The translations under genes and the position numbers were made by a program. The notes under the pieces are model-generated. The model was not told the DNA's origin. It did no database searches and saw nothing but the letters and a program-made list of their open reading frames with translations. Below are positions 17,806 to 48,938 of a stretch of DNA of 64,000 nucleotides, one piece after another. Numbering within the stretch: the stretch's first letter is position 1; every line of letters starts with the position of its first letter. The DNA lies in the IMG/VR virus record IMGVR_UViG_3300046616_000314, positions 124,001 to 188,000 of that record. One strand, given 5' to 3'.

Positions 17806-17874
17806 TTAAAATTACCTAAAAATTTATAATCCCATATTGCCAAATTGGGACAACGGAAGTCAATAAATAAACGC

Positions 17875-19236
17875 ATGGCTATTCACACATTGGATCATTT
17901 TTATGATCGTCAGCAACTTCGTTTCCTAGAGCAAGTGGTTCGCGCCTTTTCGGGGTTCCAATATACCATTGGTAGCCGCAAGGGTATGCCTCCTGAACTG
18001 AAGATGGTCCCGGTCACGATGGCTAAGACAAGCAAGCTTGTCGCCAACATCATGCGCAACGGTTCTGAAAACAGCCTCAACTCCGCGCCTCAGATTACGG
18101 TCTGGCAGACAGGCTTGACGGGGCGTCGCGAAGACGTTCAGAACCCGGCTCACGTTGATGAGCTAAAAGTTATCGAGCGTGCGATTGATCCGCTCACGAA
18201 CAAATATACGGCTGAACGCGGGCGTAGTTATAGCGTCAAGCGTCTGATGCCCCGACCGTTCAACATGGAAATCCAAATCGACCTTTGGACATCCAACTAC
18301 GAACAAAAATACGAAATCATGGAACAAATTCTTCCGGTTATGTATCCTAACTTCTGGATTCAAAACAGCGACAATGCGTTGGATTGGACTGCCCTGACGG
18401 ATGCTCACCTAGAAGACATCACATGGACTTCTCGTTCTATTCCGGTCGGTACCGAGGAATTGGAAATCTCTACGATGAAGCTGCGTATTCCTATTTGGAT
18501 TTCGCCGCCAGCCATGGTCACGCAACAGCGTCTCATCGAACAAATCGTCACGAACATCAACGACGTTCCGTTCGATGAAAATACTATCGTGGATAAGGAC
18601 TACGCGAAAGGTAAGCGCATGTCGCAAGAGGTTGTTACTCCTGGCAACTTCAAAGTCTACATCGAAGGCAACATCGCTTCGCTAGTCGATGAGCGTGGCT
18701 CGAATGTCGATGCAGAGGGCAATCCCTACAAATGGTCTGAATTGCTTTGGGATTATGGAGCGTTGCGCCCGGCTGTCAGCCGTATGATTTTGAATCCCAA
18801 TGCGGCTGATTTGGAAGCGACATCGGGTATCGTTGGCACGCTGCAATACAGCCAAGACCCGAATGAATTATTTTTCCAAATTGATCCAGACACGATCCCG
18901 AGCAACACGTTTGCTCCGGTTGACGCCTTGATTGATCCTATGACAGCGTTCCCAAGCCAAAAACTTCCCCCGGTGGCTCAAGGTCAACGATATCTGATTA
19001 TCAGTGATGTTGGACCTTCGGTAGCGTGGGGAAATCTGAATGCCAGCGTAAATGATATTATTGAATTTTCGGGTACGGAATGGTTTGTATCGTTTGATGC
19101 TTCGCAATCGGACGCAACACAGTTACAGTTCGTATTGAATTTGAATTCTTCGAATCAACTCAAGTGGACTGGTATAGAATGGATTCTATCTATCGATGGT
19201 ATCTATAACCCTGGCTTCTGGCGTCTAAAACTCTGA
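17875..19236 (+). CDS. tail sheath stabilizer/tail completion protein, T4 gp15-like, with C-terminal extension
   Basis: HFYDRQQLRFL, MPRPF...DLWTSN.EQK..IMEQI...F; C-terminal GQRYLI...WG...NDIIEF module; AATAAATA upstream. Confidence 0.75.
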   Translation: MAIHTLDHFYDRQQLRFLEQVVRAFSGFQYTIGSRKGMPPELKMVPVTMAKTSKLVANIMRNGSENSLNSAPQITVWQTGLTGRREDVQNPAHVDELKVIERAIDPLTNKYTAERGRSYSVKRLMPRPFNMEIQIDLWTSNYEQKYEIMEQILPVMYPNFWIQNSDNALDWTALTDAHLEDITWTSRSIPVGTEELEISTMKLRIPIWISPPAMVTQQRLIEQIVTNINDVPFDENTIVDKDYAKGKRMSQEVVTPGNFKVYIEGNIASLVDERGSNVDAEGNPYKWSELLWDYGALRPAVSRMILNPNAADLEATSGIVGTLQYSQDPNELFFQIDPDTIPSNTFAPVDALIDPMTAFPSQKLPPVAQGQRYLIISDVGPSVAWGNLNASVNDIIEFSGTEWFVSFDASQSDATQLQFVLNLNSSNQLKWTGIEWILSIDGIYNPGFWRLKL

Positions 19237-21628: not shown

Positions 21629-22305
21629 TGGTGTACGAAAAAACAGAGACGTGTTTCGTACTTCAACACCCTGACAAGTACGAAAAATATTGGACGGGCG
21701 TTGGCATCGCCAAGGCGCGATCCAATGGCGTGCGCTTTGATGTTCAAGGCAAGATGTATCCGTCTGCGGAAGATGCAATGATCGCGCATGACATTTATCA
21801 GGTTGCCGCGAATTATTTCAAATCGGCGAACTTGCCGCCTAGCCTAGACCTAGTTGAACTTCAAATCACCACCAAAGAAATCGGCAAACCGGAGCGTATG
21901 CCGAACCAAGAAAAGAATTTGGTGATCTCTAATTTTCTTAAAATTCCTGACGCTCAGCGCAAGGAATTCGCGCATCTATATGACTTCGCGAACTATCTAC
22001 TAGATCATAGGTCATATGATCTAGTCAATCAATTTGACTATCTGGTTGCAGTGCAAGGTGACTTTGATGATTACCGTACCGGGGGACGCGAAGAAGAATG
22101 GACGGCATATGTCGCAATGATCGAAAGCAAGCTTTCGATTTCACTGGGCTTAAAACATAATAAACTTTGGCACAATAGCTCAGACTATAACAAACGTCTC
22201 GTGTACTGCGTTTTTCCGGTCAATTCGGATGATCTTGTGGTTGTAAAGATGCTCTGCCCTGCGATGCGCGCAATCAACCTGCGCACCGGAAAGCTGGCGT
22301 CCTGA
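21628..22305 (+). CDS. hypothetical protein, paralog trio member 1
   Basis: N-terminal KYWTG...F...GK module shared with the next two ORFs. Confidence 0.65.
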   Translation: MVYEKTETCFVLQHPDKYEKYWTGVGIAKARSNGVRFDVQGKMYPSAEDAMIAHDIYQVAANYFKSANLPPSLDLVELQITTKEIGKPERMPNQEKNLVISNFLKIPDAQRKEFAHLYDFANYLLDHRSYDLVNQFDYLVAVQGDFDDYRTGGREEEWTAYVAMIESKLSISLGLKHNKLWHNSSDYNKRLVYCVFPVNSDDLVVVKMLCPAMRAINLRTGKLAS

Positions 22306-22916
22306 TGTCAGTCGATATCGTCTACAAAATCCGAGACAAGACCACGGGTCTGTACTGGGGCGGTCCCAAGCTCCAATGCACGGATCAAGTTGGAACACGC
22401 TTTGCGCGTTGGTCGATGGTCGAACAGGTCGTCAATGATATGTATCGTCTTCACGGCGGCTTCCCTGAAAATTGGGAAATCCTGACGGTCAAACTCAAAG
22501 AAGAAATTGAATTCATTCGCGACCACAAGCAAATTTCGATCACACATATGATCGAACAAATCTTGATGAAACGGTCTGCCGAATTTGGACTAAACTCGCA
22601 CGTTATGGATTCGTTGCTGACAAGCGGATCGTTCATGAAGCTTCGGCGCAATCAAGTTCTGAAGCGGTGGACGCACGTGTTTTATGTGCCGATCTCTCGC
22701 TATTCGAACGTTCAGATTCGTGCAGAATTGTCCAAGAAATTCGGTGACATTGAAGGTCACATGACCATCAAGGACAATCGCTGGGTCTTCACGGACAATG
22801 CAGAGATCGCTTCGACTGCGGTTATGATGGGCTTGACGGAAGTCTGTATTGACATCAATAACTTACGCGGTTGGTTGGCGGAAAAAATTGGTTGTGAGCC
22901 TGAAGCGATATGGTAA
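22305..22916 (+). CDS. hypothetical protein, paralog trio member 2
   Basis: YKIRDKTTGLYWGG...VGTRF. Confidence 0.65.
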   Translation: MSVDIVYKIRDKTTGLYWGGPKLQCTDQVGTRFARWSMVEQVVNDMYRLHGGFPENWEILTVKLKEEIEFIRDHKQISITHMIEQILMKRSAEFGLNSHVMDSLLTSGSFMKLRRNQVLKRWTHVFYVPISRYSNVQIRAELSKKFGDIEGHMTIKDNRWVFTDNAEIASTAVMMGLTEVCIDINNLRGWLAEKIGCEPEAIW

Positions 22917-23515
22917 CGAGAACAACGACGGGCTATCGCCTTCGCGCCCCTGATGGAAAATTTTATAAAAAAGGTTCGTATAATCTTGGCGAGCCTTGGT
23001 TCGATAAGATCGGTTCGCGGTTCGCGAACCTGAATGCGATGAATACTGCCTGGGTCATCTATTTGGATGAAGCCAAAAAAACAGATACGCCCGAGAAATA
23101 TCCGCAACTGACTCCGATTGAAGTCAAGACGGTTTCGGTCATCAAAGAGCGGGAGTTGTCTGCAACGAAACCAACGACCGATCTTGCTATGCAATTTCGT
23201 TCTGTGTTCCGCTACGACACTGAGGCTTGGCATTTCCTGCGCCAGTGTTGCCGCAAGAACCTTGAGCCTGTCTACGTCATTCGTATTGGCGGTCTCATTT
23301 CCGAAACTTCGGACTTTTTGCAAGTTTTGGAAACGAACCTTACGATTAAAATTTCGCCCCTTGCGAAATACATGAAGGATAATCAGTTTGATTACAACGC
23401 GGATCGGATAGTTGCCGTATTTTCGGAAGCTGATTTAGCTTTCATTAAGATGAAAATCCCCAAGAGACTTACCCTCATCGGGTGTGATCTTAGAACCATG
23501 ACAGAATTTGCTTGA
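22910..23515 (+). CDS. hypothetical protein, paralog trio member 3
   Basis: YRLRAPDGKFYKKG...IGSRF; C-terminal VFSEADLAFIKM. Confidence 0.65.
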   Translation: MVTRTTTGYRLRAPDGKFYKKGSYNLGEPWFDKIGSRFANLNAMNTAWVIYLDEAKKTDTPEKYPQLTPIEVKTVSVIKERELSATKPTTDLAMQFRSVFRYDTEAWHFLRQCCRKNLEPVYVIRIGGLISETSDFLQVLETNLTIKISPLAKYMKDNQFDYNADRIVAVFSEADLAFIKMKIPKRLTLIGCDLRTMTEFA

Positions 23516-23580
23516 CAACGGGAGAATCTATAGTAATGTTCGGACATAGATCGAAACAACATTCTTTCGGAGATAAAACC

Positions 23581-23724
23581 ATGCCGAACACCGCCGCTGG
23601 TCGTCAGCAAGCCTATCTCAAGTCGCAATCGGTCGATGATCTGAAGGCGGGCATTCGCAGCCTGCAACCGGGCGAAATGCGTTCGATCTTGGAAGACGAA
23701 CTGCAACGCCGCCTGAACCCCTAA
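23581..23724 (+). CDS. small hypothetical protein
   Basis: GGAG RBS; MPNTAAGRQQ...; TTGACA promoter at ~23512. Confidence 0.5.
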   Translation: MPNTAAGRQQAYLKSQSVDDLKAGIRSLQPGEMRSILEDELQRRLNP

Positions 23725-24458
23725 TGTTTATCAAGGGGCTCCGCTGTACGGGATTTAATAGTTGGTTCAGCACCGACATTAAATTCACGAAGAATACCTG
23801 CATCATTGGAATGAATGGTGCAGGTAAGACAACGGTCCTGAACCTGCTTGCCGGTGTCATGGGGACACCGAACGCCAATGAATTGATTGAAGGGCGTCCG
23901 ATCACGTCTTGTGAAATCGACTTCATTGACGACGATGGCAATGAACGTACTTTCTCTATGAAGAACAAAAATCAGTTCGACATGGATGAGATCACCGAAT
24001 TCAAAAAGACCCTGTACAACAAGGTGAGTTTCATTCTCACCAGTGACACATTCGATGACTACTTCGTTGGTCGTCGGGCTGATGGCGTTGAGAACTTTCA
24101 ACGAATGCAGCAAATTTTGGAAGGCATGGACCACATGCATTTCAATAACCAGAACACACGTATCGAAGGGAAGACCTACCAGGGCTTCGTATCCGAGACC
24201 GGGGCGCAACGTTATTTGCTGCACCTGTTTATGCGAATGCCCCCTGAGACTGGCGTTCCCATTCTGGTTGATGGTCCCGAACGCCATCTGCATCCTTCGA
24301 CGCAACGCACGCTAATGGAAACCATTCGTCACGTCGAACAGTTTATCTTTACATGCCATAGCCCGTTCATGCTGTCGGAATCGCGCCAGGGGCGTGAAGG
24401 TAGAAGCACGATCATCGATCTGGCAACGGGAAAATCGTCTGATTTTTTTGACGATTAA
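23724..24458 (+). CDS. ABC-type ATPase (AAA_21/OLD-like)
   Basis: Walker A GMNGAGKTT; Walker B/D-loop ILVDGPERHLHP; H-switch TCHSP. Confidence 0.8.
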   Translation: MFIKGLRCTGFNSWFSTDIKFTKNTCIIGMNGAGKTTVLNLLAGVMGTPNANELIEGRPITSCEIDFIDDDGNERTFSMKNKNQFDMDEITEFKKTLYNKVSFILTSDTFDDYFVGRRADGVENFQRMQQILEGMDHMHFNNQNTRIEGKTYQGFVSETGAQRYLLHLFMRMPPETGVPILVDGPERHLHPSTQRTLMETIRHVEQFIFTCHSPFMLSESRQGREGRSTIIDLATGKSSDFFDD

Positions 24459-24477
24459 ATTTATTTTCGGATTTATG

Positions 24478-24506
24478 TTGACAAGCTCGTCGCAGTTTGC
24501 TAAATA
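24478..24506 (+). promoter_or_regulatory. promoter of leader peptide/tRNA operon
   Basis: TTGACA-N17-TAAATA, 6 nt before ATG 24513. Confidence 0.55.
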
Positions 24507-24512
24507 TAGATT

Positions 24513-24629
24513 ATGAAAAACGCATCGACCCTTTTCGCAACTGTTGCCCCGGCTTTCGCCGGTCGCGGCTTTGTGCGCGGTGGCTCGGAGGAACGTGAAG
24601 GTTCCGCCGGGTTGCTTGGTCGCGTTTAA
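24513..24629 (+). CDS. putative 38-aa leader peptide ahead of the tRNA cluster
   Basis: MKNASTLFATVAPAFAGRGFVRGGSEEREGSAGLLGRV; overlaps an 11-bp stem (24605-24615/24652-24662). Confidence 0.5.
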   Translation: MKNASTLFATVAPAFAGRGFVRGGSEEREGSAGLLGRV

Positions 24630-24697
24630 CTAGACCATCCTTAAATTAAGGGCAACCCGGCGATCCAGTGGACAACCACTGGACCAAATTGCCATGC

Positions 24698-24774
24698 GCG
24701 CCCTTCGTCTAACTGGACTAGGACCCTCGACTTTCAATCGGGTAATGCGGATTCGAATTCCGTAGGGCGTACCA
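24698..24774 (+). tRNA. tRNA-Glu(UUC)
   Basis: Cloverleaf with CT-TTC-AA loop and CCA end. Confidence 0.92.
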
Positions 24775-24794
24775 ACCTTTATTAGGTACATGAT

Positions 24795-24869
24795 GCGGCT
24801 ATAGCTCAGAGGTAGAGCGTCTGCTTGCCATGCAGAAGGTCGTGGGTTCGATCCCCACTAGCCGCTCCA
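24795..24869 (+). tRNA. tRNA-Gly(GCC)
   Basis: Cloverleaf with TT-GCC-AT loop, U73, CCA. Confidence 0.95.
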
Positions 24870-24893
24870 TCACCCTAATAAATGTTCCTGTGT

Positions 24894-24968
24894 GGAGCAT
24901 TCGTCTATCGGTTAGGACGCCAGAATTTCACTCTGGAAAGAGGGGTTCGATTCCCCTATGCTCTTCCA
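24894..24968 (+). tRNA. tRNA-Glu(UUC), second divergent copy
   Basis: Cloverleaf with AT-TTC-AC loop and CCA end. Confidence 0.9.
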
Positions 24969-25010
24969 AAAAATTATTGTCAAATATAATTTCCATGATA
25001 CAAGTATAGC

Positions 25011-25394
25011 ATGGAAACCAAGTCCTACATCATTGATGCATTTGTAACCAGGGATAACACCTTCTGGGGATCGCTCACCACGACAATTAAGCGTCCGATG
25101 GACGGATGGGAATGCTTGCCTGGACATGCGCCGTACAACGCCTACTGCATGTTTTGGGGCAGACGAGACCAAACGAAAATTAACCTAAAACAGGTTCCTT
25201 ACACCAAGCGTCATCGCACTCTTCACGTAAAACATCGTGACGGATTTTTGAGTGTCAATGGCGTAACTCCCCTGCACCCGCAAAACGATGCCGTGCTGTT
25301 CGATCAGATGCGGGCGACTATTCCTGTCTGGTATCCTGAATTCATGGATCGCCTGGACGAAATGATGATCATGTTTTTGCTGAAGGAAAGCTGA
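25011..25394 (+). CDS. hypothetical protein
   Basis: 127-aa ORF. Confidence 0.6.
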   Translation: METKSYIIDAFVTRDNTFWGSLTTTIKRPMDGWECLPGHAPYNAYCMFWGRRDQTKINLKQVPYTKRHRTLHVKHRDGFLSVNGVTPLHPQNDAVLFDQMRATIPVWYPEFMDRLDEMMIMFLLKES

Positions 25395-25395
25395 A

Positions 25396-25605
25396 ATGGC
25401 TAAGCTGGAAATTGGTTCGCGCGTCGTTATGGTCAACCACAAGGGCGATGATCGCGCCATCGACTATGGCGAAGACAAACTGGAAATCGGCATGACCGGG
25501 ACCATCACCGGCAAGGACACCGATGACTTTGAGTGGGTCGCCAAAATCGATCAAGACAATGGTCGGGAATATGGCTTCTATCGCGGTGAACTGAAGCTTA
25601 TCTAA
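25396..25605 (+). CDS. small SH3/KOW-like beta-barrel protein
   Basis: LEIGSRVV...GMTGTI...ELKLI pattern; AAGGA RBS. Confidence 0.55.
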   Translation: MAKLEIGSRVVMVNHKGDDRAIDYGEDKLEIGMTGTITGKDTDDFEWVAKIDQDNGREYGFYRGELKLI

Positions 25606-25655
25606 GTATTCGCTTGACGAATGCTTGAAAGGGGTTATACTCGTAACATAATCAT

Positions 25656-26282
25656 TTGATTCTTTGTTGGAGATACGTCTTGGAAGATTACAATGAATGG
25701 TTCCAGTGGGCGGTGACGCAGAAAGTGCATCCCGACGTGCTGGGCTATATCCAAGTCTTCAAGAACGAATTGTCGCTGTATGACGACGGTCGTAACACGA
25801 TCACGCCGAGGGCGTGGGTTCGTATCTCGGACATGCTTTACGCCAACACCGAGGAAGACATTCTGAGAGCCGCTATGCGAGTCATCGGCGGCGCCGATGC
25901 CCAAAGCCTTGACCGGTTTCTCTACTATCGGACCATCTTGACTGGTATCTCGCCGGTTGATTCCATTCTGTCGGGAAATGCCACGGTCGAGACGGCGAAG
26001 ACTACGACCGAGCGAATGGCTGCGATTACCATGGCGTACTCTTCGTCTGTGGCGGCGTGCTATGAACTTGCTGCGCGTGCCGAACAAGGTGTTACCGACG
26101 AATGGTATCAAGCCGCTGATAATTTCATTCAGTATTTGGTGACGACCGAAGTCGTTGAACTTCAGGTTGATATTTTGAAGCAAGCTATCGTCGTGTACAA
26201 ACTCCCGTTTTCCACGGCTAAGATGCCAGTGTTTGCCAAATACACCAAAGATATGCGTCGTATGGTTTTGGAGGATTGTTAA
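25656..26282 (+). CDS. stand-alone C-terminal part of a MoxR-like AAA+ ATPase
   Basis: EW.QWA...HP.V..YI and TPRAW sensor motif, no Walker A/B; real start likely TTG ~25680 after GGAG. Confidence 0.5.
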   Translation: MILCWRYVLEDYNEWFQWAVTQKVHPDVLGYIQVFKNELSLYDDGRNTITPRAWVRISDMLYANTEEDILRAAMRVIGGADAQSLDRFLYYRTILTGISPVDSILSGNATVETAKTTTERMAAITMAYSSSVAACYELAARAEQGVTDEWYQAADNFIQYLVTTEVVELQVDILKQAIVVYKLPFSTAKMPVFAKYTKDMRRMVLEDC

Positions 26283-26752
26283 TGATCGATATCGTCACCG
26301 AAATGCGTCGCTGCTATGAGCAATTCCAAGGTCAGCGGACGCTCGAAAATTTCGATATGTTCGAAAGCCTCGCGGAGAACTTTAGCGTGATCGCCGAACA
26401 CGCGGCACGTGAAGCCATGGATGGGCGGATGCGTAGCGTCAGCGTTTCGAAGGCTTCGGTCCAACCTCTGACCACCGACAAGGAATATGGCAAGGGCGTC
26501 AATGTCCACTATTCGGTGGATGCCAAGTACGGCTTCCTGCTGTCGGACCCCTACACCTATCAAGCCGGGGCGATGGGTCCGATGTTCAGGAGCTTCACGG
26601 ACATCCTGCGCAAGCGGATGGAAGCTCTGTACGGCAAGTACGCGAAGGTGTATGTTCAACACAATTACGGCGGGCGCAAGAAGAACTTCACTTTCTTGGT
26701 GACGGTGAAGTGCTACCCGTCGATGTATTCGCGCGAAGAGGAAGCCGCCTGA
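26282..26752 (+). CDS. hypothetical protein
   Basis: Coupled ORF. Confidence 0.6.
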   Translation: MIDIVTEMRRCYEQFQGQRTLENFDMFESLAENFSVIAEHAAREAMDGRMRSVSVSKASVQPLTTDKEYGKGVNVHYSVDAKYGFLLSDPYTYQAGAMGPMFRSFTDILRKRMEALYGKYAKVYVQHNYGGRKKNFTFLVTVKCYPSMYSREEEAA

Positions 26753-27510
26753 TGAACGACCCCGTTCAATTCGAACGCGACTATAATACCGCTGTTGATC
26801 TTCAGCGGTATCGCGAAAGCATCATGCACGGCATCTATTCGGCTATTCAGACGAGCCTTGGTGTCGCGTTCGCAACGAACGATATTTCGAAGCTGCTGTA
26901 TCGTTATCTTGAACCGCACAAGACTCAAGAAGGCACGATTCGCATTCGCGAATTCCATGTCCCGGTCAAGGTGATCACCGATGCCTGTGACTATCTGGGC
27001 ATGGATTTGAACGTTCCTCAATCGCGTCAAGACTATGAAAACGCTAGTGAAGTTCTAGAAAAGGTTATGGTGTGCGGTAAGTCGAATGCCGAATTGGCGG
27101 CTTTCCCCGGCTACTACCAACCGAAGATCATCGATCCGGCTGAATATGAAATCCGTGCGCTGTCGATGGCAATGCATACGACCGTTGTCCGAATCAACAT
27201 CGAAGAAAAAGAAACCGAAGACTTTCCGATTCGTGTCCCGAAGGTTCTTCGGAAGCTGTACGATGCTTTCCTGATCCATCCCGACGTGATCGAGTACGGC
27301 AACCAGTATCGGATTTATAATAAAGCTCGCAAGCGCGACATTTATTATTTCCGCAACAATCCCGCCGTCGATGCTTTCTCGGAAGAATTGATCGCGTTGA
27401 TCAAGTCCAAGCAAGATGCGGAAACTGAAGCGAAGACCAATGCCGAACGCATTAAGCGTCAAGAAACTTACTTGATGCTGAAGGCAGAATTCGAGCCCGA
27501 AACCCTCTAG
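26752..27510 (+). CDS. hypothetical protein
   Basis: TGATG-coupled ORF. Confidence 0.65.
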   Translation: MNDPVQFERDYNTAVDLQRYRESIMHGIYSAIQTSLGVAFATNDISKLLYRYLEPHKTQEGTIRIREFHVPVKVITDACDYLGMDLNVPQSRQDYENASEVLEKVMVCGKSNAELAAFPGYYQPKIIDPAEYEIRALSMAMHTTVVRINIEEKETEDFPIRVPKVLRKLYDAFLIHPDVIEYGNQYRIYNKARKRDIYYFRNNPAVDAFSEELIALIKSKQDAETEAKTNAERIKRQETYLMLKAEFEPETL

Positions 27511-27519
27511 GAGATAATC

Positions 27520-27840
27520 ATGTCCGATTCGCCTGCTTATCGCCTGGGATTCTTTGGGCTCTGCGTCGAAGACAACCACAACAAGGTGTGGGGTTGGATT
27601 GTATCAACGAGCGGAAATCGTTATTACATTTTTTGGGGCAAGGCTGGCGCCAAGAAACTAAGTATGGCGGAACGCAACGTTGGGCAAATTAATAACCTAG
27701 TGCGCGAGAAACAATCGCTAGGTCGTAAGAACGGAACCTACGTCGCGGTTCATAAAGACCATGTTGAGCAAGCCTATCCCAATTTCTGGGAACAGCTTGA
27801 AGAACAATTCTGCTTCATGAGGCTGAAGGCTAAGATTTAG
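27520..27840 (+). CDS. WGR-domain-like protein
   Basis: HNKVWG...YYIFWGK...K..Y pattern; AGGAG RBS. Confidence 0.55.
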   Translation: MSDSPAYRLGFFGLCVEDNHNKVWGWIVSTSGNRYYIFWGKAGAKKLSMAERNVGQINNLVREKQSLGRKNGTYVAVHKDHVEQAYPNFWEQLEEQFCFMRLKAKI

Positions 27841-30217
27841 TCCGCGAGAGATTGGTCTTCAGAGCCGTAGGCAAACGCAGTTCCAATTCAGCGATAACAT
27901 CCTTGAGAGCTTGGCGTTGCGTATTGGATAGGTTCGGAGCAATGTTCAAGATTTTTTGACGAGCCGCCGAACTATCTAGATAGCTAGATTCGGTTGTCAT
28001 CATTTCCTTGAATTCATTACCTTCCATTACGCCATAGTACCAAACGGTCGATGACCATGCTGGCTTGATAGCAGCATGGAAGACCTGTAGCCCGGCATAA
28101 TGACCCATGGGCGTAGCGACTTCACTGATAGTTTTTCCGGTCTTGTGCGTGCTCTCGTTTCGGATAAGCCCAAATACCTCAAGGTCACTCGTTTGGAGAT
28201 TGCTCCCTAGTTTCAATTTGTGTTGCTTTACGAATTTAAGCAAATCAAAATTGCCTGCTTCTAACGCATCTTCAAGACGACGTTCAGCGGCGTCATGATA
28301 TGATGATGACTTGAAACGATTCTTTTGAGTTTTGAATCGTTGATAACGACTTACTGTACCGCTGACCGAAGTGATTTCATCTTTGTCATTCACAATGACA
28401 AGCCACGCCAGATCACTCCAACGCTCGATTTTACCAACGCGGTCTGGGGCTTCGCCATTTAGTGCGAGCGTTATATAATACGACTTTGGAGCATCCTCGC
28501 CAGGGCTAGGAATTTTCCAAATTGGATCGTTGCCAAGTTTGCCGAGGCTTTCGCTAAACTCTTGGAAGGGCTTCCACTCGCCATTGACGAAAGTGACACC
28601 TAGTGTTTCTGGCATATGAACAGCCCAACTTTCACAGAAGAAATGTTGATCATTAAAATAATCAGCGATTTCTTTTGCATATTTTGTGAACAATGCGGGG
28701 TCGCCGTTTGGCTTTTTCATTGCCGAAATCTTATTGTTATTGACTTCGGTCAGAGGCATAGTCTCGCCATCGATGGTGATAGAAACGGCATCACCTTCGC
28801 GCTGAATGGAAATATCTCCATACTGTTTAGCAAACGACTCACCCTTGGATGCAACAGAGATACCTAGATAATTAGCGATCTCTTCCATGTTCATGCGACC
28901 ATTGCCGCGAACGCGCTTGTCGGTTGATGCCTTCTTGAAAATGTTTTGAACTTGATCGACTTGGACCGGGCGAGCGCGTTGCTTCGACCAGAATTCATCC
29001 ATGAAAGCAAACACTTTATCCATGTAGCTTTTCTTGGTGTTGAAGCTGAACGTTTTCTCGTTGGCGGCTTCCAACGACTTGACCAACAGTTGCGCGGTTT
29101 TCTGAGACATTTCCTCAGTGAACGGTAGCTTGAAGCGATCAGCGATAGCTTTGATACGCTCAATTTTTTGAGCCAGCTTCGGACCATATTCTTTTTCGTA
29201 GCTGTATTCGTCGCCACGATGCGGCTCCACATTTTTGAAACGCTCTGCCATATCGGCGGCGATTTCAGTGAATGAAGCCGTATTGTCGTACTGAACTTTG
29301 ATCGGCTTGAAGCCTGGACCTTGAAGCGTGACCGCCATCTTTGAAGCCGTGGATTCAGTATTTTCGCGATGCTTGCGCATGAACGAGTAATCCTTGTCTA
29401 GGATAACGACGATCTTGCGCTTAGCAGCGGTGTAATAAGTTGTCTCGTGTTCGCCACCAACCGCATTCGAAGACACGAGGCGGTCGCCAATAGCTTTGGC
29501 GATCATGGCGGGGAGGCGTTGTAGTTGTTCGGTGTGATCAGCCGAGCCGATCTCAGCTTGCGTTGCCGCGCGATTTCGTAGTTCAAATACGTCGATCACC
29601 TTGAAAGCAGAACGCTTCATGAAGACAATTTGTTCGGGTTCGGCGCGATAGATAATAGCTTCATGTTCTGATCGCGATTTGTCCTCTAGCGCATCGATTC
29701 CTGCTTTCAGGAAGAACGCCGTTTGGGTCGCGTTGTCGTGTTTAACCTTTTGACCGACCTGGGTATAGGACTGCACAACGGCAAAGAACGCTTTTGCGAT
29801 GATATTGCCTTGTTGGAACTGACCCACACGTTGGATCATGTTCATTTTTTTCTCAGGATCGGCAATGCCCATCTTGGTCAGAATCGAGATAGCGGTGTCT
29901 TTGGTCAGGTCGTTGAGAACGAGCTTATGAGCCGACGTGTCTTGGATGACGCGCAGATAGCGGGTCTGTTGTCCGTACTGAATGTCGGCGGGGTGATTAA
30001 GAACGTATTCCAGCGGATAGGCGTACAAGCCCGCCGGGTCCGAGTGATTGGGAACCGGAGAGAAATTACGATCCAGAGTGTTACCGGCGTGATCGCCAAA
30101 ATTCACATATAAATCTTGGCGATGAGCCAAGGGCATATACTTCTTGCGGAAAGCTTCGAACGTCTTCGGAAAGAAGTCCGCAGCGTGAATTTCATTGAGG
30201 ATTTCGTATGCGCGCAT
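27830..30217 (-). CDS. large late protein with PxGLYAYPL domain, candidate capsid-packaged protein
   Basis: 795 aa; MRAYEILNE leader; N-domain paralogous to 60714-62093; AATAAATA 4 nt upstream. Confidence 0.7.
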   Translation of the reverse strand: MRAYEILNEIHAADFFPKTFEAFRKKYMPLAHRQDLYVNFGDHAGNTLDRNFSPVPNHSDPAGLYAYPLEYVLNHPADIQYGQQTRYLRVIQDTSAHKLVLNDLTKDTAISILTKMGIADPEKKMNMIQRVGQFQQGNIIAKAFFAVVQSYTQVGQKVKHDNATQTAFFLKAGIDALEDKSRSEHEAIIYRAEPEQIVFMKRSAFKVIDVFELRNRAATQAEIGSADHTEQLQRLPAMIAKAIGDRLVSSNAVGGEHETTYYTAAKRKIVVILDKDYSFMRKHRENTESTASKMAVTLQGPGFKPIKVQYDNTASFTEIAADMAERFKNVEPHRGDEYSYEKEYGPKLAQKIERIKAIADRFKLPFTEEMSQKTAQLLVKSLEAANEKTFSFNTKKSYMDKVFAFMDEFWSKQRARPVQVDQVQNIFKKASTDKRVRGNGRMNMEEIANYLGISVASKGESFAKQYGDISIQREGDAVSITIDGETMPLTEVNNNKISAMKKPNGDPALFTKYAKEIADYFNDQHFFCESWAVHMPETLGVTFVNGEWKPFQEFSESLGKLGNDPIWKIPSPGEDAPKSYYITLALNGEAPDRVGKIERWSDLAWLVIVNDKDEITSVSGTVSRYQRFKTQKNRFKSSSYHDAAERRLEDALEAGNFDLLKFVKQHKLKLGSNLQTSDLEVFGLIRNESTHKTGKTISEVATPMGHYAGLQVFHAAIKPAWSSTVWYYGVMEGNEFKEMMTTESSYLDSSAARQKILNIAPNLSNTQRQALKDVIAELELRLPTALKTNLSRTKS

Positions 30218-31114: not shown

Positions 31115-32191
31115 ATGCGCGCATTCGAACTGTTTGAAGAAAAGAAAACCCTCTACGTCTCTCGTAAGCTGAAGAACGGCGAGGCGTTAGTGAAATGGGC
31201 TAAGGATCAAGGCTTTACTGAATGCCTAGCCCCATCGGAAATGCATGTCACGATTGCATATTCCAAGAGCAAGATCGAATGGAGCGATATGACTTCAGCC
31301 GAGAAAGAGCTTACGGTCAAAAAGAAATCTGGCAAGCGTAAGATCAAATGTTTCGGGGAAGACAAAAACGCAGTCGTTTTGGTTTTCGATAGCGAGGAAC
31401 TTAAGGATCGCTGGAAAGAATTTAAAGATGAGCTAGGGGCATCCTGGGACTTCCCGACTTATCATGCTCACGTAACCATTACCTACAACGGTCTTCCCGA
31501 AGGTGTGAAGCTCAAAGACATTACGCCCTATGAGGGTCCTTTGGAATTTGGTCCCGAACGCAAGTCGGAGATCACCAAGGATTGGAAGGGTAAGACCAAG
31601 ACGAAGAAACTCACGGAATCATTTCGTCTGGCTGACGTAGATACCGAAGAACTGTACCAGACCTTCAAGAAATCCTATGAAGCCGAAACGGGCGCAAGCT
31701 GGTCTAAGGACAAGATGCTAGAGCGGGCGCGCAATTGGGAATTCTTCGGAGAACCTACAGGCTTCGTTGCGATTCGTCGGCAAGCCTCTGGGATGGTGAA
31801 ACTCGTTGCTACGGCAGGCGACTTCAAAGGCATCATGCGCGGCTTCTCAGAACTTCAGAACGAGGGTGGTCCGTTGTGGGGCGCCGTCTCTAATCAACTA
31901 GCGAGAATCGCCAAGAGCCGGGGTATGATCGTGCCTCACCTGATGCCGGGTGGTCCGACCTTCATTAAGCTGATGGTTCCCATGATCCCGGCAGCGGTGT
32001 TCGGTGGGTTCGAACCAAAGATCAATGACGATGGTGGCATGACATTTGAGTATGATGATGTAGGGGCAGCTACCAAGTATTTGATTGGTAACAAAGAATA
32101 TTTCAAAATGGCTATTGCCAATAACAATCTTTCATCGTATATTTCAAAGGTTCCTGGGTTGAAACAATTCCTAGCTTTGATTGGATTATGA
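31115..32191 (+). CDS. Acb1-like 2H phosphoesterase (anti-CBASS-like) fused to a second domain
   Basis: Two HxT motifs (MHVTIAYS, HAHVTITY) plus GASWDF and PYEGPLEFGPE; MRAFELFEE leader; GCTAAATA upstream. Confidence 0.75.
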   Translation: MRAFELFEEKKTLYVSRKLKNGEALVKWAKDQGFTECLAPSEMHVTIAYSKSKIEWSDMTSAEKELTVKKKSGKRKIKCFGEDKNAVVLVFDSEELKDRWKEFKDELGASWDFPTYHAHVTITYNGLPEGVKLKDITPYEGPLEFGPERKSEITKDWKGKTKTKKLTESFRLADVDTEELYQTFKKSYEAETGASWSKDKMLERARNWEFFGEPTGFVAIRRQASGMVKLVATAGDFKGIMRGFSELQNEGGPLWGAVSNQLARIAKSRGMIVPHLMPGGPTFIKLMVPMIPAAVFGGFEPKINDDGGMTFEYDDVGAATKYLIGNKEYFKMAIANNNLSSYISKVPGLKQFLALIGL

Positions 32192-36121: not shown

Positions 36122-37474
36122 ATGATTCGACTGCACAATTCGTTGTCACGGAAGTTGGAAGACTTCAAGCCGATTGATTCTAATCGGGTGACGATGTACG
36201 TGTGTGGTGCGACCGTTTATGACACCCCTCACCTGGGTAACGCCCGTCCTGCTGTTGTGTTCGACGTGCTGTTCCGGCTGTTGCAACACGCCTATCCCTT
36301 GGTTGAGTATGCGCGAAACTTCACTGACGTTGATGACAAGATCATCGCCCGGTCGAACGAATCCGGCGAACCCATCAATGAACTGACTGAACGGGTCATC
36401 CGCGAGTATCACGCCAGCATGGATGCGCTGGGCGTGGCGCGACCGACTTATGAGCCGCGCGTGACGGGCAACATGGCTCCGATCAAGGGCATGATCTCTG
36501 AACTGATTATGTCGGGGCACGCCTATGTCTCTGAAGGTCATGCACTATTCGACGTGAAATCATTCCCGTTGCATGGATCATTGAGCGGACATCTTCAAGA
36601 AAACTTGGATGTTGGACACCGCGTGGCTGTTGCCGACTATAAGCGCGATCCGGCGGATTTCGTTTTGTGGAAGCCTGCCAAGGAAGGCGAGCCCGCTTGG
36701 GACTTCCCTTCGGTTAGTTCGGGTCGCCCTGGCTGGCACATTGAATGCTCCGCGATGATCAAAAATGTTTTCGCGGACAACACCATTGATATTCATGGCG
36801 GCGGCGCGGACCTTCGGTTCCCGCATCACGAATGCGAAATGTCACAGAGCCATGCGGCGAATGGTCATCATTTAGCTAACTACTGGCTGCACAATGCCAT
36901 GGTTACGCTTGGTGGAAGCAAGATGCAAAAGACGGGTAGTCATATGATTACTGTCGATCAAATTTTGCGAAACAATGATGGGGCTTCAGTTCGCTTTGCA
37001 TTGCTGTCAAGCCATTATCGGTCGCCTCTGGATTGGTCGCCAGAACTACTCGAAAACAGCCATGGGACGCTTGCTAAGTGGCATAAGCTACTTTCGGCGA
37101 GCGATGCTCCTGCGGAGGCTAACAACGTCTCTACGGCGATCCTGAAGCCTCTGTATACCGATCTGAACGTCCCTGGCGCGGTGGGTGCAATCCATAACGC
37201 GCTGGCGACTGTCACGGATACGGTTGCCGCCGGGGTTCGCTATGCTGCTTCGGTCATGGGCTTCGATCTCAGTCAGGAAGCCAACCTAGCGTTCTTGAAG
37301 GAACCGGAGTTGGAGCCGCAATTGGTTCTGGAAATCGAGCGTTTGCTAGGCGAACGGGCTGTTGCCAGACAAAATAAAAATTTTGCGGAATCGGATCGGG
37401 TTCGCGAACTGATCGCCAACATGGGGGTCGTTGTGGAAGACGGTCCCGAAGGCACGACGTGGAAAGTCAAATGA
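36122..37474 (+). CDS. cysS: cysteinyl-tRNA synthetase
   Basis: YVCG.TVYD..HLGNAR, NFTDVDDKII, DF.LWK, GRPGWHIECSAM, DIHGGG.DL.FPHHE, KMQKT (KMSKS variant), C-terminal anticodon-binding domain. Confidence 0.95.
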   Translation: MIRLHNSLSRKLEDFKPIDSNRVTMYVCGATVYDTPHLGNARPAVVFDVLFRLLQHAYPLVEYARNFTDVDDKIIARSNESGEPINELTERVIREYHASMDALGVARPTYEPRVTGNMAPIKGMISELIMSGHAYVSEGHALFDVKSFPLHGSLSGHLQENLDVGHRVAVADYKRDPADFVLWKPAKEGEPAWDFPSVSSGRPGWHIECSAMIKNVFADNTIDIHGGGADLRFPHHECEMSQSHAANGHHLANYWLHNAMVTLGGSKMQKTGSHMITVDQILRNNDGASVRFALLSSHYRSPLDWSPELLENSHGTLAKWHKLLSASDAPAEANNVSTAILKPLYTDLNVPGAVGAIHNALATVTDTVAAGVRYAASVMGFDLSQEANLAFLKEPELEPQLVLEIERLLGERAVARQNKNFAESDRVRELIANMGVVVEDGPEGTTWKVK

Positions 37475-47575: not shown

Positions 47576-47893
47576 ATGTTGAGCACCACACTTATCACCA
47601 TCGCGGTCATCATTGTCATGATCAGCACGGCTGTTTCCATTTTTGCCTTTTTGGTATGGAATGGTGCAATCACTGATCGTGATGACGCAGGGATAATGAT
47701 TTTTGCAAGCTGCGCGGGTGGAGTTTTCTTCTTCCTGTCGATCCCTGCTATTTTTATCATTTTGATTTTCAGAGGCTTGTTCAAGCTTTTTGAAGGTTTC
47801 TTCACTGACGTTATTTGGTATAGCCAGCAACGTAAGAAAGAAATCACACAAGCAGAAGAAGCACACAAAGCTAAACTTAAGCAAAGAAAATAA
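47576..47893 (+). CDS. membrane protein
   Basis: Two transmembrane segments. Confidence 0.6.
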   Translation: MLSTTLITIAVIIVMISTAVSIFAFLVWNGAITDRDDAGIMIFASCAGGVFFFLSIPAIFIILIFRGLFKLFEGFFTDVIWYSQQRKKEITQAEEAHKAKLKQRK

Positions 47894-47894
47894 T

Positions 47895-48938
47895 ATGCTG
47901 ATCGAATCTAAGAAGTATTACGACTACGACGACGTTTTGATTCTACCGAAGAAGACTTTTCTCAAGTCACGTAATGACGTTTCTTTGACGGTACTCTATA
48001 AGACCAAGCATTCGCAACGTTCTTTAGTAGGCGTGCCGATCTTTGCGGCAAACATGGACACCACAGGTACGTTTGAAATGGCGAGAGCCCTTCAAGCGGA
48101 ATCCATGTTCACCTGTCTGCATAAGTTTTACACGGCTGAAGAGATCATCGCCCAATTCGATAGCGGATTGTCTTATAATTTTGCGTTCGTAAGCATCGGC
48201 AAGTCGGCTGCGGACATCGAAAAATTTTCAAAGATTCACGACAAATATCCTAACGCGCATCTGTGTATCGATGTTGCCAACGGCTATACCGACGACTTCC
48301 TTACCTTTGTGAAGGAAGTCCGCGCAACGTTCCCGAAGACCGTCATCATGGCGGGCAACGTTGCTACGGATGACATCATTGCCGAATACGACGCAGCGGG
48401 TGTCGATATCGTCAAGATCGGCATCGGTCCTGGGAACTTCTGTCGTACTCGCACGACGGCTGGTGTTGGTGTTCCCCAACTGTCAGCGGTTATGGACACG
48501 TCGGCTGCTGCTGATGGCTATGGCATCTTGATTTGCGCCGATGGCGGGCTGAATGAATATTGCGATTTCGCGAAGGCATTTGCTGGCGGCGCCAACTTTG
48601 TCATGGCTGGTTCGATGTTCGCTGCCCATGAAGAATCGGGTGGTGACAAAATTACCGAGAACGGCGAGACGTTCAAGATCACCTACGGAATGTCGTCTGA
48701 GACTGCCATGAACAAATATTATGGCAAGGTGGATGGCTATCGCGCATCCGAAGGTCGAACCGTAAAGGTCCCGTATAAGGGTCCGGTGGCGGACACTGTT
48801 CGAAATATCCTGGGTAGCTTGCGTAGCACGCTGACTTATACTAATATCGCCAAGCTGGATAATTTGTACATGGCGAAGATGATTGTGGTCAACAATACCA
48901 TTAATCGCAGCCACGTACGGAACACGATTGGGAACTGA
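47895..48938 (+). CDS. guaC: GMP reductase
   Basis: DYDDVLILPK..SR, AANMDTTGTFEMA, CIDVANGY, KIGIGPG..C.TR, ADGG, YRASEGRTV; no CBS domains. Confidence 0.9.
   Translation: MLIESKKYYDYDDVLILPKKTFLKSRNDVSLTVLYKTKHSQRSLVGVPIFAANMDTTGTFEMARALQAESMFTCLHKFYTAEEIIAQFDSGLSYNFAFVSIGKSAADIEKFSKIHDKYPNAHLCIDVANGYTDDFLTFVKEVRATFPKTVIMAGNVATDDIIAEYDAAGVDIVKIGIGPGNFCRTRTTAGVGVPQLSAVMDTSAAADGYGILICADGGLNEYCDFAKAFAGGANFVMAGSMFAAHEESGGDKITENGETFKITYGMSSETAMNKYYGKVDGYRASEGRTVKVPYKGPVADTVRNILGSLRSTLTYTNIAKLDNLYMAKMIVVNNTINRSHVRNTIGN

What the first reader, a model, noticed from the sequence alone, without database searches (positions are those of the whole stretch)
24478..24968. Gly/Glu-rich leader peptide with alternative RNA structures upstream of a Glu-Gly-Glu tRNA cluster
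Seen: promoter, then a nearly leaderless 38-codon ORF (24513-24629). Its last 22 codons hold all 7 Gly and 3 Glu codons, including GGT GGC TCG GAG GAA CGT GAA GGT, the codons read by the downstream tRNA-Glu(UUC) x2 and tRNA-Gly(GCC). Just after that run, CGCCGGGTTGC (24605-15) pairs perfectly with GCAACCCGGCG (24652-62). The overlapping GGGCAAC (24650-56) can alternatively pair with GTTGCCC (24543-49), and an 8-bp hairpin follows (24664-83). Inference: a ribosome-stalling sensor that raises phage tRNA output when host Glu/Gly tRNAs are depleted, for example by anticodon nucleases. Caveats: no U-tract terminator is visible, and GC-rich sequence inflates Gly codons.
Basis: partly seen in the sequence, partly recalled or inferred. 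Interest (0 to 1): 0.7.

Follow-up and report, generated by a model that had tools for sequence, protein, structure and literature searches.

The report
Codon-matched leader ORF before phage tRNAs
A 561-kb phage puts short reading frames rich in exactly the codons read by the downstream tRNAs in front of three of its tRNA operons; two look like classical ribosome-sensing attenuators, while the flagged Glu-Gly-Glu leader has the sensor half but no visible terminator.

Summary
The ORF is probably translated. Its codon usage matches this phage's real genes, and the 6-nt promoter-to-ATG spacing recurs at bona fide genes. The strong structure is confined to 24596-24697 (z = -6.2). The proposed alternative pairing is at chance level, and no terminator exists.

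The decisive evidence lies outside the window. In the same genome, two other tRNA operons have distal promoters and short ORFs whose codon runs match their tRNAs one for one. These are SSSHSYCYSSH before Ser/Ser/Ser/Tyr-like/Cys...His/Ser, and KLLRRRKWLRR before Arg/Arg/Trp/Leu/Leu/Lys. Each run is followed by a predicted antiterminator/terminator pair with classical attenuator geometry.

The flagged leader shares the codon run, the helix just after it and a stop codon in a hairpin loop. It lacks the terminator, so its output step is unknown. No homologues were found except one near-identical RNA contig joined to a different tRNA. I found no paper describing leader-peptide attenuation of tRNA operons. 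Verdict: interpretation partly supported; a new variant of a known mechanism.

The parts
24478..24506 (+). Promoter-like site: -35 TTGACA (24478-83), 17-nt spacer, -10 TAAATA (24501-06)
   Evidence: Read directly. It is the only promoter-like site within 330 nt upstream of the tRNA cluster. The same design sits 9-35 nt upstream of eight other tRNA clusters. The strict consensus scan does not call it.
24513..24629 (+). Leaderless 38-codon ORF (MKNASTLFATVAPAFAGRGFVRGGSEEREGSAGLLGRV, stop TAA 24627-29)
   Evidence: Listed. Codon-usage score is +0.53 per codon, in the range of real genes; the other two frames score -0.53 and -0.76; 0 of 14790 open shuffles reach it. ATG lies 6 nt after the -10 box, as at eight other ORFs of 38-230 aa. 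No homologue was found among proteins.
24579..24602 (+). Gly/Glu codon run GGT GGC TCG GAG GAA CGT GAA GGT (codons 23-30); further Gly codons at 17, 19, 33, 36
   Evidence: By standard wobble rules GGT/GGC are read by tRNA-Gly(GCC) and GAA/GAG by tRNA-Glu(UUC).
24590..24605 (+). Small hairpin GGAAC-GTGAAG-GTTCC inside the codon run
   Evidence: Predicted. Not tested separately.
24605..24662 (+). Three-way junction. An exact 11-bp helix (24605-15 with 24652-62) encloses hairpin TGGTC/GACCA (24617-37), whose 11-nt loop holds the stop codon, and hairpin CCTTA/TAAGG (24639-51).
   Evidence: MFE equals centroid; z = -6.2 for 24596-24697. (helix -26.7 kcal/mol, p = 0.001). Its position just 3' of the codon run, and the stop codon in a hairpin loop, match the antiterminator helices of the two canonical leaders.
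24664..24683 (+). 8-bp hairpin TCCAGTGG-ACAA-CCACTGGA, followed by CCAAATTGCCATGC (no U-tract)
   Evidence: pairing probability 0.97 in all ribosome positions. Not a terminator by the scan.
24698..24774 (+). tRNA-Glu(UUC), divergent copy, encoded CCA
   Evidence: 50.9 bits.
24795..24869 (+). tRNA-Gly(GCC)
   Evidence: 73.6 bits.
24894..24968 (+). tRNA-Glu(UUC), second copy, 94.8% identical to the tRNA-Glu of Xanthomonas phage XacN1

Best explanation
The 185-nt leader is the sensor half of a ribosome-mediated regulator of the Glu-Gly-Glu tRNA operon. It is the third, non-canonical member of a set of codon-matched leader ORFs in this phage.

Proposed mechanism:
1. Host RNA polymerase starts at or next to the ATG (inferred from promoter spacing).
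2. A ribosome translates the 38-codon ORF without a 5' UTR (inferred).
3. If decoding of GGU/GGC or GAG (codons 17-26) is slow, the ribosome stops short of 24605. The 11-bp helix 24605-15:24652-62 then forms as soon as it is transcribed (computed).
4. If decoding is fast, the ribosome covers the 5' strand until it terminates at the UAA, which sits in a hairpin loop (computed).

In the two canonical leaders of the same genome, the equivalent helix is an antiterminator that sequesters the 5' arm of a U-tract terminator. There, slow decoding of the operon's own codons lets transcription run into the tRNA genes, which is negative feedback by the operon's own products.

In the flagged leader the helix's 3' strand belongs to no terminator. 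The output step is therefore not identified. It may be an unconventional termination, pause or processing event. Alternatively, control may have been lost.
For: Shown by computation:
- Distal promoter only, 191 nt from the tRNA, as in the Ser leader (250 nt). Eight other clusters have promoters 9-35 nt away.
- The ORF is gene-like in codon usage and has the recurrent leaderless spacing.
- Its Gly+Glu content gives the lowest p-value (3.6e-4) among 88 ORFs upstream of the 18 tRNA clusters analysed. The next two are the Ser and Arg leaders.
- E/G-dense windows are rare genome-wide: 18 in 1.12 million codon positions.
- Ser leader: the run TCA TCG TCA CAC TCG TAT TGC TAT TCC AGT CAT precedes Ser(CGA), Ser(GGA), Ser(GCU), a Tyr(GUA)-like gene, Cys(GCA), His(GUG) and Ser(UGA). 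A terminator follows the ORF.
- Arg leader: the run AAA TTG CTG CGT CGC CGT AAG TGG CTT CGA CGC precedes Arg(GCG), Arg(UCG), Trp, Leu(CAG), Leu(GAG) and Lys(CUU). A terminator follows the ORF.
- In both, a ribosome parked in the run leaves an antiterminator free (-31.4 and -41.5 kcal/mol before the terminator's 3' arm exists). A ribosome further on masks it.
- Runs of at least 11 such residues occur only 2 and 4 times in the whole genome in six frames.
- The tRNA-rich phage XacN1 shows no such runs.
- In all three leaders the stop codon lies in the loop of a small hairpin inside the helix.
Against: - There is no U-tract terminator, and no structure competes with the 11-bp helix for a functional element. 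The helix and the 8-bp hairpin can form together.
- The Gly/Glu run is interrupted (6 of 8 codons). Glu alone is not enriched (3 of 38, against 5.6% genome-wide).
- The run overlaps a hairpin, so structure and codon content are confounded.
- The ORF differs from the canonical leaders. It is leaderless, longer and gene-like in codon usage (0.53 per codon against about 0), and it uses the commonest synonymous codons.
- The antiterminator pairing of the Arg leader is not significant on its own against shuffles (p = 0.2).
- There are no expression data, no mapped transcription start and no diverged homologues for covariation.
Confidence: 0.42

Rival explanations
1. An ordinary small leaderless protein gene is co-transcribed with three tRNAs. 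The three-way junction and hairpin at its 3' end form a stability or insulation element. After RNase P cuts at the tRNA 5' end, they would protect the short mRNA from 3' exonucleases and keep the mRNA from interfering with tRNA folding. The Gly/Glu content would be coincidental.
For: Codon usage is as in real genes, unlike the two canonical leader peptides. There is no terminator. The significant structure is limited to the ORF's 3' end and the spacer. Small ORFs next to tRNAs are common in this genome and in XacN1.
Against: The peptide has no homologue among 1.84 billion representative proteins, no paralogue in the genome and no look-alike in the ESM Atlas. The Gly/Glu enrichment ranks first among 88 upstream ORFs, in a genome that demonstrably uses codon-matched leaders. 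The exact 11-bp helix lies precisely where the canonical antiterminators lie.
Confidence: 0.3
2. A decayed or rewired attenuator. The leader descends from a terminator-type attenuator like the other two but has lost its terminator, so the operon is now constitutive and the ORF and helix are relics.
For: It has the same order of elements as the canonical leaders, minus the terminator.
Against: The helix is perfect (11 of 11 bp) and the ORF is intact with good codon usage, which argues for continuing selection. A near-identical copy sits next to a different tRNA in another sample. The three leaders share no detectable sequence similarity.
Confidence: 0.13
3. A non-coding structured 5' leader or stable small RNA, released by RNase P, in the manner of the stable RNAs in the T4 tRNA cluster. 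The ORF would be fortuitous.
For: The fold is strong (z = -4.1 overall, -6.2 for the 3' part). In a small metatranscriptome only 24541-24687 of a 5.9-kb stretch is present. 74% of shuffles stay open.
Against: The frame-specific codon-usage signal was never reached by open shuffles. The 5' 88 nt have no unusual structure. No Rfam family matches. No structural or sequence paralogue exists in the genome.
Confidence: 0.12

Closest known systems
Leader-peptide transcription attenuators of amino-acid biosynthesis operons (trpL, hisL, thrL, leuL, pheL) and of pheST (pheM)
   Same: A short ORF after the promoter carries codons tied to the regulated product, and the ribosome's position decides which RNA helix forms. 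The two other leaders of this genome also have the terminator/antiterminator pair and U-tract.
   Different: The regulated genes are tRNA genes, so the sensed molecules are the operon's own products. The runs mix several amino acids and synonymous codons, one or more per tRNA of the operon. The flagged Glu-Gly-Glu leader is leaderless and has no terminator.
Rho-dependent or stalling-type leader peptides (tnaC, mgtL)
   Same: These leader ORFs act without an intrinsic terminator, which is what the flagged leader would need.
   Different: No C-rich unstructured Rho-loading stretch is evident. The spacer is tightly folded. No arrest-peptide motif is known here. Not tested experimentally.
T-box riboswitches
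   Same: They sense the tRNA charging state in a 5' leader and control read-through.
   Different: T-boxes bind tRNA directly, need no ORF and precede aminoacyl-tRNA synthetase or amino-acid genes. The Rfam scan at E up to 10 found no T-box match.
mRNA-tRNA co-transcripts and stable RNAs in tRNA clusters (E. coli tufB operon; phage T4 tRNA region with its species 1 and 2 RNAs). Recalled from general knowledge.
   Same: A protein-coding or structured RNA segment shares a transcript with tRNAs and is separated from them by RNase P.
   Different: In those cases no relation between codon content and tRNA identity is known.

Membership tests
Ribosome-mediated transcription attenuator (trp/his type) | Short ORF between the promoter and the regulated genes, plausibly translated | tested here: met
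   ORF 24513-24629. Leaderless spacing class; gene-like codon usage. Translation itself is not shown.
Ribosome-mediated transcription attenuator (trp/his type) | Regulatory codons cognate to the regulated product, clustered | tested here: met
   10 of 38 codons are Gly/Glu, and 6 of 8 in 24579-24602. p = 0.002 against shuffles; best of 88 upstream ORFs. The signal is weaker than the 11-codon runs of the Ser and Arg leaders.
Ribosome-mediated transcription attenuator (trp/his type) | Intrinsic terminator (GC-rich hairpin plus U-tract) between the ORF and the regulated genes | tested here: not met
   None on the + strand in 24513-24697. The 8-bp hairpin is followed by CCAAATTG. It is met in the Ser leader and the Arg leader.
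Ribosome-mediated transcription attenuator (trp/his type) | Antiterminator helix that overlaps the terminator's 5' arm and depends on ribosome position | tested here: not met
   The 11-bp helix depends on ribosome position: it is free for A-site codons up to 26 and masked from codon 27. It overlaps no terminator. The feature is met in the Ser and Arg leaders.
T-box riboswitch | Match to the T-box covariance model (specifier loop, T-box bulge) | tested here: not met
   The Rfam scan at E up to 10 lists only the three tRNAs and noise.
Any curated RNA family (Rfam 15), tRNA, tmRNA | Covariance-model or ARAGORN match in 24513-24697 | tested here: not met
   (including intron, low-threshold and tmRNA modes).
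Rho-dependent leader-peptide attenuator (mgtL/tnaC type) | Unstructured C-rich, G-poor Rho-loading site exposed in one state | tested here: inconclusive
   The stretch 24616-24651 has C equal to G (7 each), is only 36 nt long and lies inside the helix.
Small phage protein family | Homologues or paralogues of the 38-aa product | tested here: not met
   The only hits are a translated CRISPR-like repeat and low-complexity stretches.

The most novel reading that the evidence does not exclude
This huge phage autoregulates its tRNA operons with leader ORFs that act as codon panels. Each leader carries one or more codons for every tRNA species of its operon. A shortage of any of those decoding capacities, for example after host tRNA cleavage or during takeover, would stall the ribosome and open transcription into the operon. 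The Glu-Gly-Glu leader would do the same through a terminator-independent output that has not been described.
Probability: 0.35. Interest if true: 0.9.

Novelty: new variant of a known kind. Interest (0 to 1): 0.74.

Why it matters
Phage tRNA genes are usually treated as passive codon-usage or counter-defence cargo. Leader ORFs that read the very codons served by the downstream tRNAs would mean the phage measures decoding capacity and adjusts its tRNA supply by feedback. This extends classical attenuation from amino-acid and synthetase genes to tRNA genes. It would also give a directly testable sensor: swap the codons and the specificity should change. That makes it useful for studying tRNA-targeting defences, and possibly as a synthetic reporter of tRNA status. 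Five searches of the held literature found no description of such control. That is not proof that none exists.

Tried and rejected
Homologue searches that gave nothing useful:
- Megablast and blastn against phages found only a tRNA-Glu match to XacN1 and noise.
- Exact and structural DNA patterns in viral contigs gave no match.
- The flanking proteins have no close or syntenic relatives. The gp15-like marker has one 37% relative on a 14-kb contig.
- The 22-mer from the helix is absent from metagenome contigs. It is present in 11 Acidobacteriota MAGs, but only inside a conserved protein gene, with no similarity beyond the 22-mer, so it is a chance match.
- A codon-degenerate pattern for GGSEEREGSA gave one chance hit in a high-GC contig.

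Peptide searches:
- The query was too short for two tools.
- It is not in the protein collection and has no genomic paralogue.
- Representative-library hits are a translated repeat array and low-complexity stretches. ESM Atlas scores stay at or below 0.67.

Ideas rejected:
- A hidden tRNA, intron-containing tRNA or tmRNA in the leader.
- A T-box or any other Rfam family.
- A helix between the Gly codons and the tRNA-Glu 5' end as a processing switch; 33% of shuffles do as well.
- A general 5' hairpin just before every tRNA cluster; mean MFE is -7.8 against -6.6 for random 40-mers.
- A shared CTGAGA ribosome-binding motif or sequence homology among the three leaders.
- A Cys leader before the phage CysRS gene.

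Other limits:
- The Met-Phe cluster also has a long leader (131 nt) with a 27-codon ORF, but it carries no Met/Phe enrichment.

Full report
Context. The window is bases 124001-188000 of a single 561,116-bp virus record. The record is 48% G+C, estimated 97% complete, and carries 36 ARAGORN-called tRNA genes. The window itself encodes a T4 gp15-like tail sheath stabiliser, an Acb1 domain, a cysteinyl-tRNA synthetase and an IMPDH/GMP-reductase-like protein, so this is a huge tailed phage. The DNA comes from a rhizosphere metagenome and is present at low depth in two other DNA runs.

The observation.
- TTGACA lies at 24478-83, followed by a 17-nt spacer and TAAATA at 24501-06. The ATG is at 24513.
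- The ORF has 38 codons and ends with TAA at 24627-29.
- All 7 Gly and 3 Glu codons fall in the last 22 codons. The dense run GGT GGC TCG GAG GAA CGT GAA GGT is at 24579-24602.
- An exact 11-bp helix joins 24605-15 to 24652-62. An 8-bp hairpin lies at 24664-83.
- Three tRNAs follow: Glu(UUC), Gly(GCC), Glu(UUC).
- No intrinsic terminator lies between the ORF and the tRNAs.

What exceeds chance.
- Folding of 24511-24697 gives -78.4 kcal/mol, z = -4.1.
- The signal comes wholly from 24596-24697 (z = -6.2, MFE equal to centroid). The first 88 nt of the ORF are unremarkable (z = +0.6).
- The structured part is a three-way junction. The 11-bp helix encloses two 5-bp hairpins, and the first hairpin has the stop codon in its loop. 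One base further on comes the 8-bp hairpin.
- The helix is far better than shuffles (p = 0.001).
- An open frame of this length is expected in 74% of dinucleotide shuffles. The number of Gly+Glu codons is not expected: 10 against 4.6 +/- 1.5.

Is the ORF real? Two independent lines say it probably is.
- Codon usage. I scored codons with in-frame against out-of-frame frequencies from 264 long ORFs of the genome. The ORF scores +0.53 per codon, above the mean of real 38-codon gene windows. Its other two frames score -0.53 and -0.76. Only 0.45% of spurious small ORFs, and none of 14,790 open shuffles, reach this value.
- Promoter spacing. Among 154 TTGAC-N16-18-TAnnn(T/A) sites in the genome, the distance from the -10 box to the next ATG that opens an ORF has two peaks. 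One is at 25-30 nt. The other is a sharp peak at exactly 6 nt, with nine cases including ORFs of 77-230 aa. The flagged ORF has the 6-nt spacing, so leaderless mRNAs look like a regular feature of this phage. Shine-Dalgarno signals are weak genome-wide.

The peptide itself has no relatives anywhere I could look.

Homologues. I found no diverged homologue of the leader, the peptide or the neighbourhood. There is one exception. A small mosquito metatranscriptome holds a 236-nt contig that matches 24541-24687 with one mismatch. It then continues into a different sequence that starts like a tRNA and is absent from this genome. In that run nothing else of 22100-28000 is present apart from short partial matches over the tRNA genes. 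So the ORF's 3' two thirds plus the structured element exist, nearly unchanged, next to another tRNA. Either the RNA is abundant, or only this module is shared. Covariation could not be tested.

The decisive comparison is inside the genome. I took the 350 nt upstream of 18 tRNA clusters and asked whether any ORF is enriched for the amino acids of the cluster's tRNAs.
- The three lowest p-values among 88 ORFs are the flagged ORF (3.6e-4), an ORF before the Ser cluster at genome position about 202.8 kb (5.5e-4), and an ORF before the Arg-Arg-Trp-Leu-Leu-Lys cluster at about 553.8 kb (2.1e-3).
- The Ser leader encodes MFVSSSHSYCYSSHALSGQGTSREGYKD.
- Its run TCA TCG TCA CAC TCG TAT TGC TAT TCC AGT CAT carries at least one codon for each tRNA that follows on that strand. 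These are Ser(CGA), Ser(GGA), Ser(GCU), a sub-threshold Tyr(GUA)-like gene ending in ACCA (20.3 bits), Cys(GCA), and further on His(GUG) and Ser(UGA).
- The Arg leader encodes MSLSSTLSKLLRRRKWLRRAGSRVREGMPI.
- Its run AAA TTG CTG CGT CGC CGT AAG TGG CTT CGA CGC carries a codon for each of the six tRNAs of the operon: GCG, UCG, CCA, CAG, GAG and CUU. It also carries two codons served by Lys(UUU) and Leu(CAA) further down the strand.
- In six-frame translation of the whole genome, runs of at least 11 residues from {S,Y,C,H} occur twice and from {R,W,L,K} four times, in 1.12 million positions.
- The tRNA-rich phage XacN1, analysed the same way, shows nothing comparable.

Anatomy of the two canonical leaders.
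- Each has a distal sigma-70-like promoter and no proximal one.
- Each has a roughly 50-nt 5' UTR, then the ORF, then a small hairpin with the stop codon in its loop.
- A GC-rich hairpin with a U-tract follows (for Ser; partition-function probability 0.99 for Arg). The tRNAs come after that.
- I modelled a ribosome as masking everything up to 12 nt beyond its A-site codon. With the ribosome parked in the run (A-site codons 8-13 for Ser, 10-14 for Arg), a strand just 3' of the run stays free. This strand pairs with the terminator's 5' arm at -31.4 and -41.5 kcal/mol before the 3' arm has been made.
- With the ribosome further along or at the stop codon, that strand is masked and only the terminator forms.
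- This is the logic of classical attenuation, applied to tRNA operons and reading their own codons.
- Caveats: these are thermodynamic predictions only. The Arg antiterminator duplex alone is not significant against shuffles (p = 0.2; Ser p = 0.03).

Back to the flagged leader.
- It shares the order of elements: distal promoter, ORF, cognate run, a strong helix starting right after the run, and a stop codon in the loop of a hairpin inside that helix.
- The helix is free when the A-site is at codons up to 26, which include GGT, GGC and GAG. It is masked from codon 27 to the stop.
- The 3' strand of the helix is not half of a terminator. The next hairpin is independent of it, forms in every state (probability 0.97) and is followed by CCAAATTG.
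- I looked for other outputs and found none that beats chance. These included pairing with the tRNA 5' end, a Rho-loading stretch and hidden RNA genes or Rfam families.
- The ORF also differs in style from the two canonical leader peptides. It is leaderless, longer, gene-like in codon usage, and uses the commonest synonymous codons.

Conclusion. That idea is a translated leader whose codons are those read by the downstream tRNAs, acting as a decoding-capacity sensor. For the flagged locus itself, the sensor half is plausible but the effector half is missing. I put about 0.4 on a working sensor with an unidentified output. I put about 0.3 on an ordinary small gene with a 3' structural element. 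The rest is split between a decayed attenuator and a non-coding leader.

The proposed link to anticodon nucleases is untested. Five searches of the held literature returned nothing on leader-peptide attenuation of tRNA operons. As a class this appears to be a new variant of a known mechanism.

Noticed in passing
L023 (G000:C1:200800-203600), minus strand, about 2294 down to 2017: Canonical-looking attenuator before a tRNA operon. The order is a TTGACG-N17-TATAAA promoter, a 5' UTR, a 28-codon ORF with the run SSSHSYCYSSH, a hairpin with the stop codon in its loop, a 10-bp terminator with U-tract, then Ser(CGA), Ser(GGA), Ser(GCU), two tRNA-like genes and Cys(GCA), with His(GUG) and Ser(UGA) further on. 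This lies outside the window.
   Followed up: yes
L025 (G000:C1:553100-554500), minus strand, about 1101 down to 737: Second canonical-looking attenuator. A 30-codon ORF carries the run KLLRRRKWLRR, with one codon or more for each of the six downstream tRNAs: Arg GCG, Arg UCG, Trp, Leu CAG, Leu GAG, Lys CUU. A terminator with U-tract follows. This lies outside the window.
   Followed up: yes
L023 1480-1558 and 1586-1682, minus strand: Two tRNA-like genes that ARAGORN did not call. One is a Tyr(GUA)-like cloverleaf with a long variable arm, ending in ACCA (Rfam tRNA 20.3 bits, below threshold). The other is a tRNA-like sequence with a 42-nt insertion in the anticodon region (13 bits).
   Followed up: partly
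whole genome; in the window e.g. 24478-24515: Promoter-like sites whose -10 box ends exactly 6 nt before an ATG form a distinct class of nine cases, with ORFs of 38-230 aa. This suggests that leaderless mRNAs are common in this phage.
   Followed up: partly
window 24541-24687: A mosquito metatranscriptome run (X4) holds a 236-nt contig that matches this stretch with one mismatch, then continues into a different tRNA-like sequence beginning GCGTGTGTATCTTAGTGG. The flanking phage genes are absent from that run.
   Followed up: partly
L024 (G000:C1:4400-5200), upstream of tRNA-Met at genome 4933: Another long tRNA leader, 131 nt from the -10 box to the tRNA. It holds a 27-codon ORF (MGVGNCTLLQEDEGTPGAQISPWRWRR) that carries no Met/Phe enrichment. 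Its role is unknown.
   Followed up: partly
window 31115-32191; 36122-37474; 17845-19236; 47790-48938; 23724-24458: Pfam matches: an Acb1 (anti-CBASS) domain protein, a cysteinyl-tRNA synthetase, a T4 gp15-like tail sheath stabiliser, and an IMPDH/GMP-reductase-like protein. Directly upstream of the leader lies an AAA_15/AAA_21 ATPase, whose relatives are annotated as OLD-family.
   Followed up: partly
window 24698-24774 versus 24894-24968: The two tRNA-Glu(UUC) genes differ strongly. The first is a divergent copy (50.9 bits, enlarged D-loop, encoded CCA). The second is 94.8% identical to the tRNA-Glu of Xanthomonas phage XacN1.
   Followed up: no
window 24650-24671: This 22-mer occurs exactly in 11 Acidobacteriota MAGs, inside a conserved protein gene, with no similarity beyond the 22 bases. 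It is a chance match and not a homologue.
   Followed up: yes
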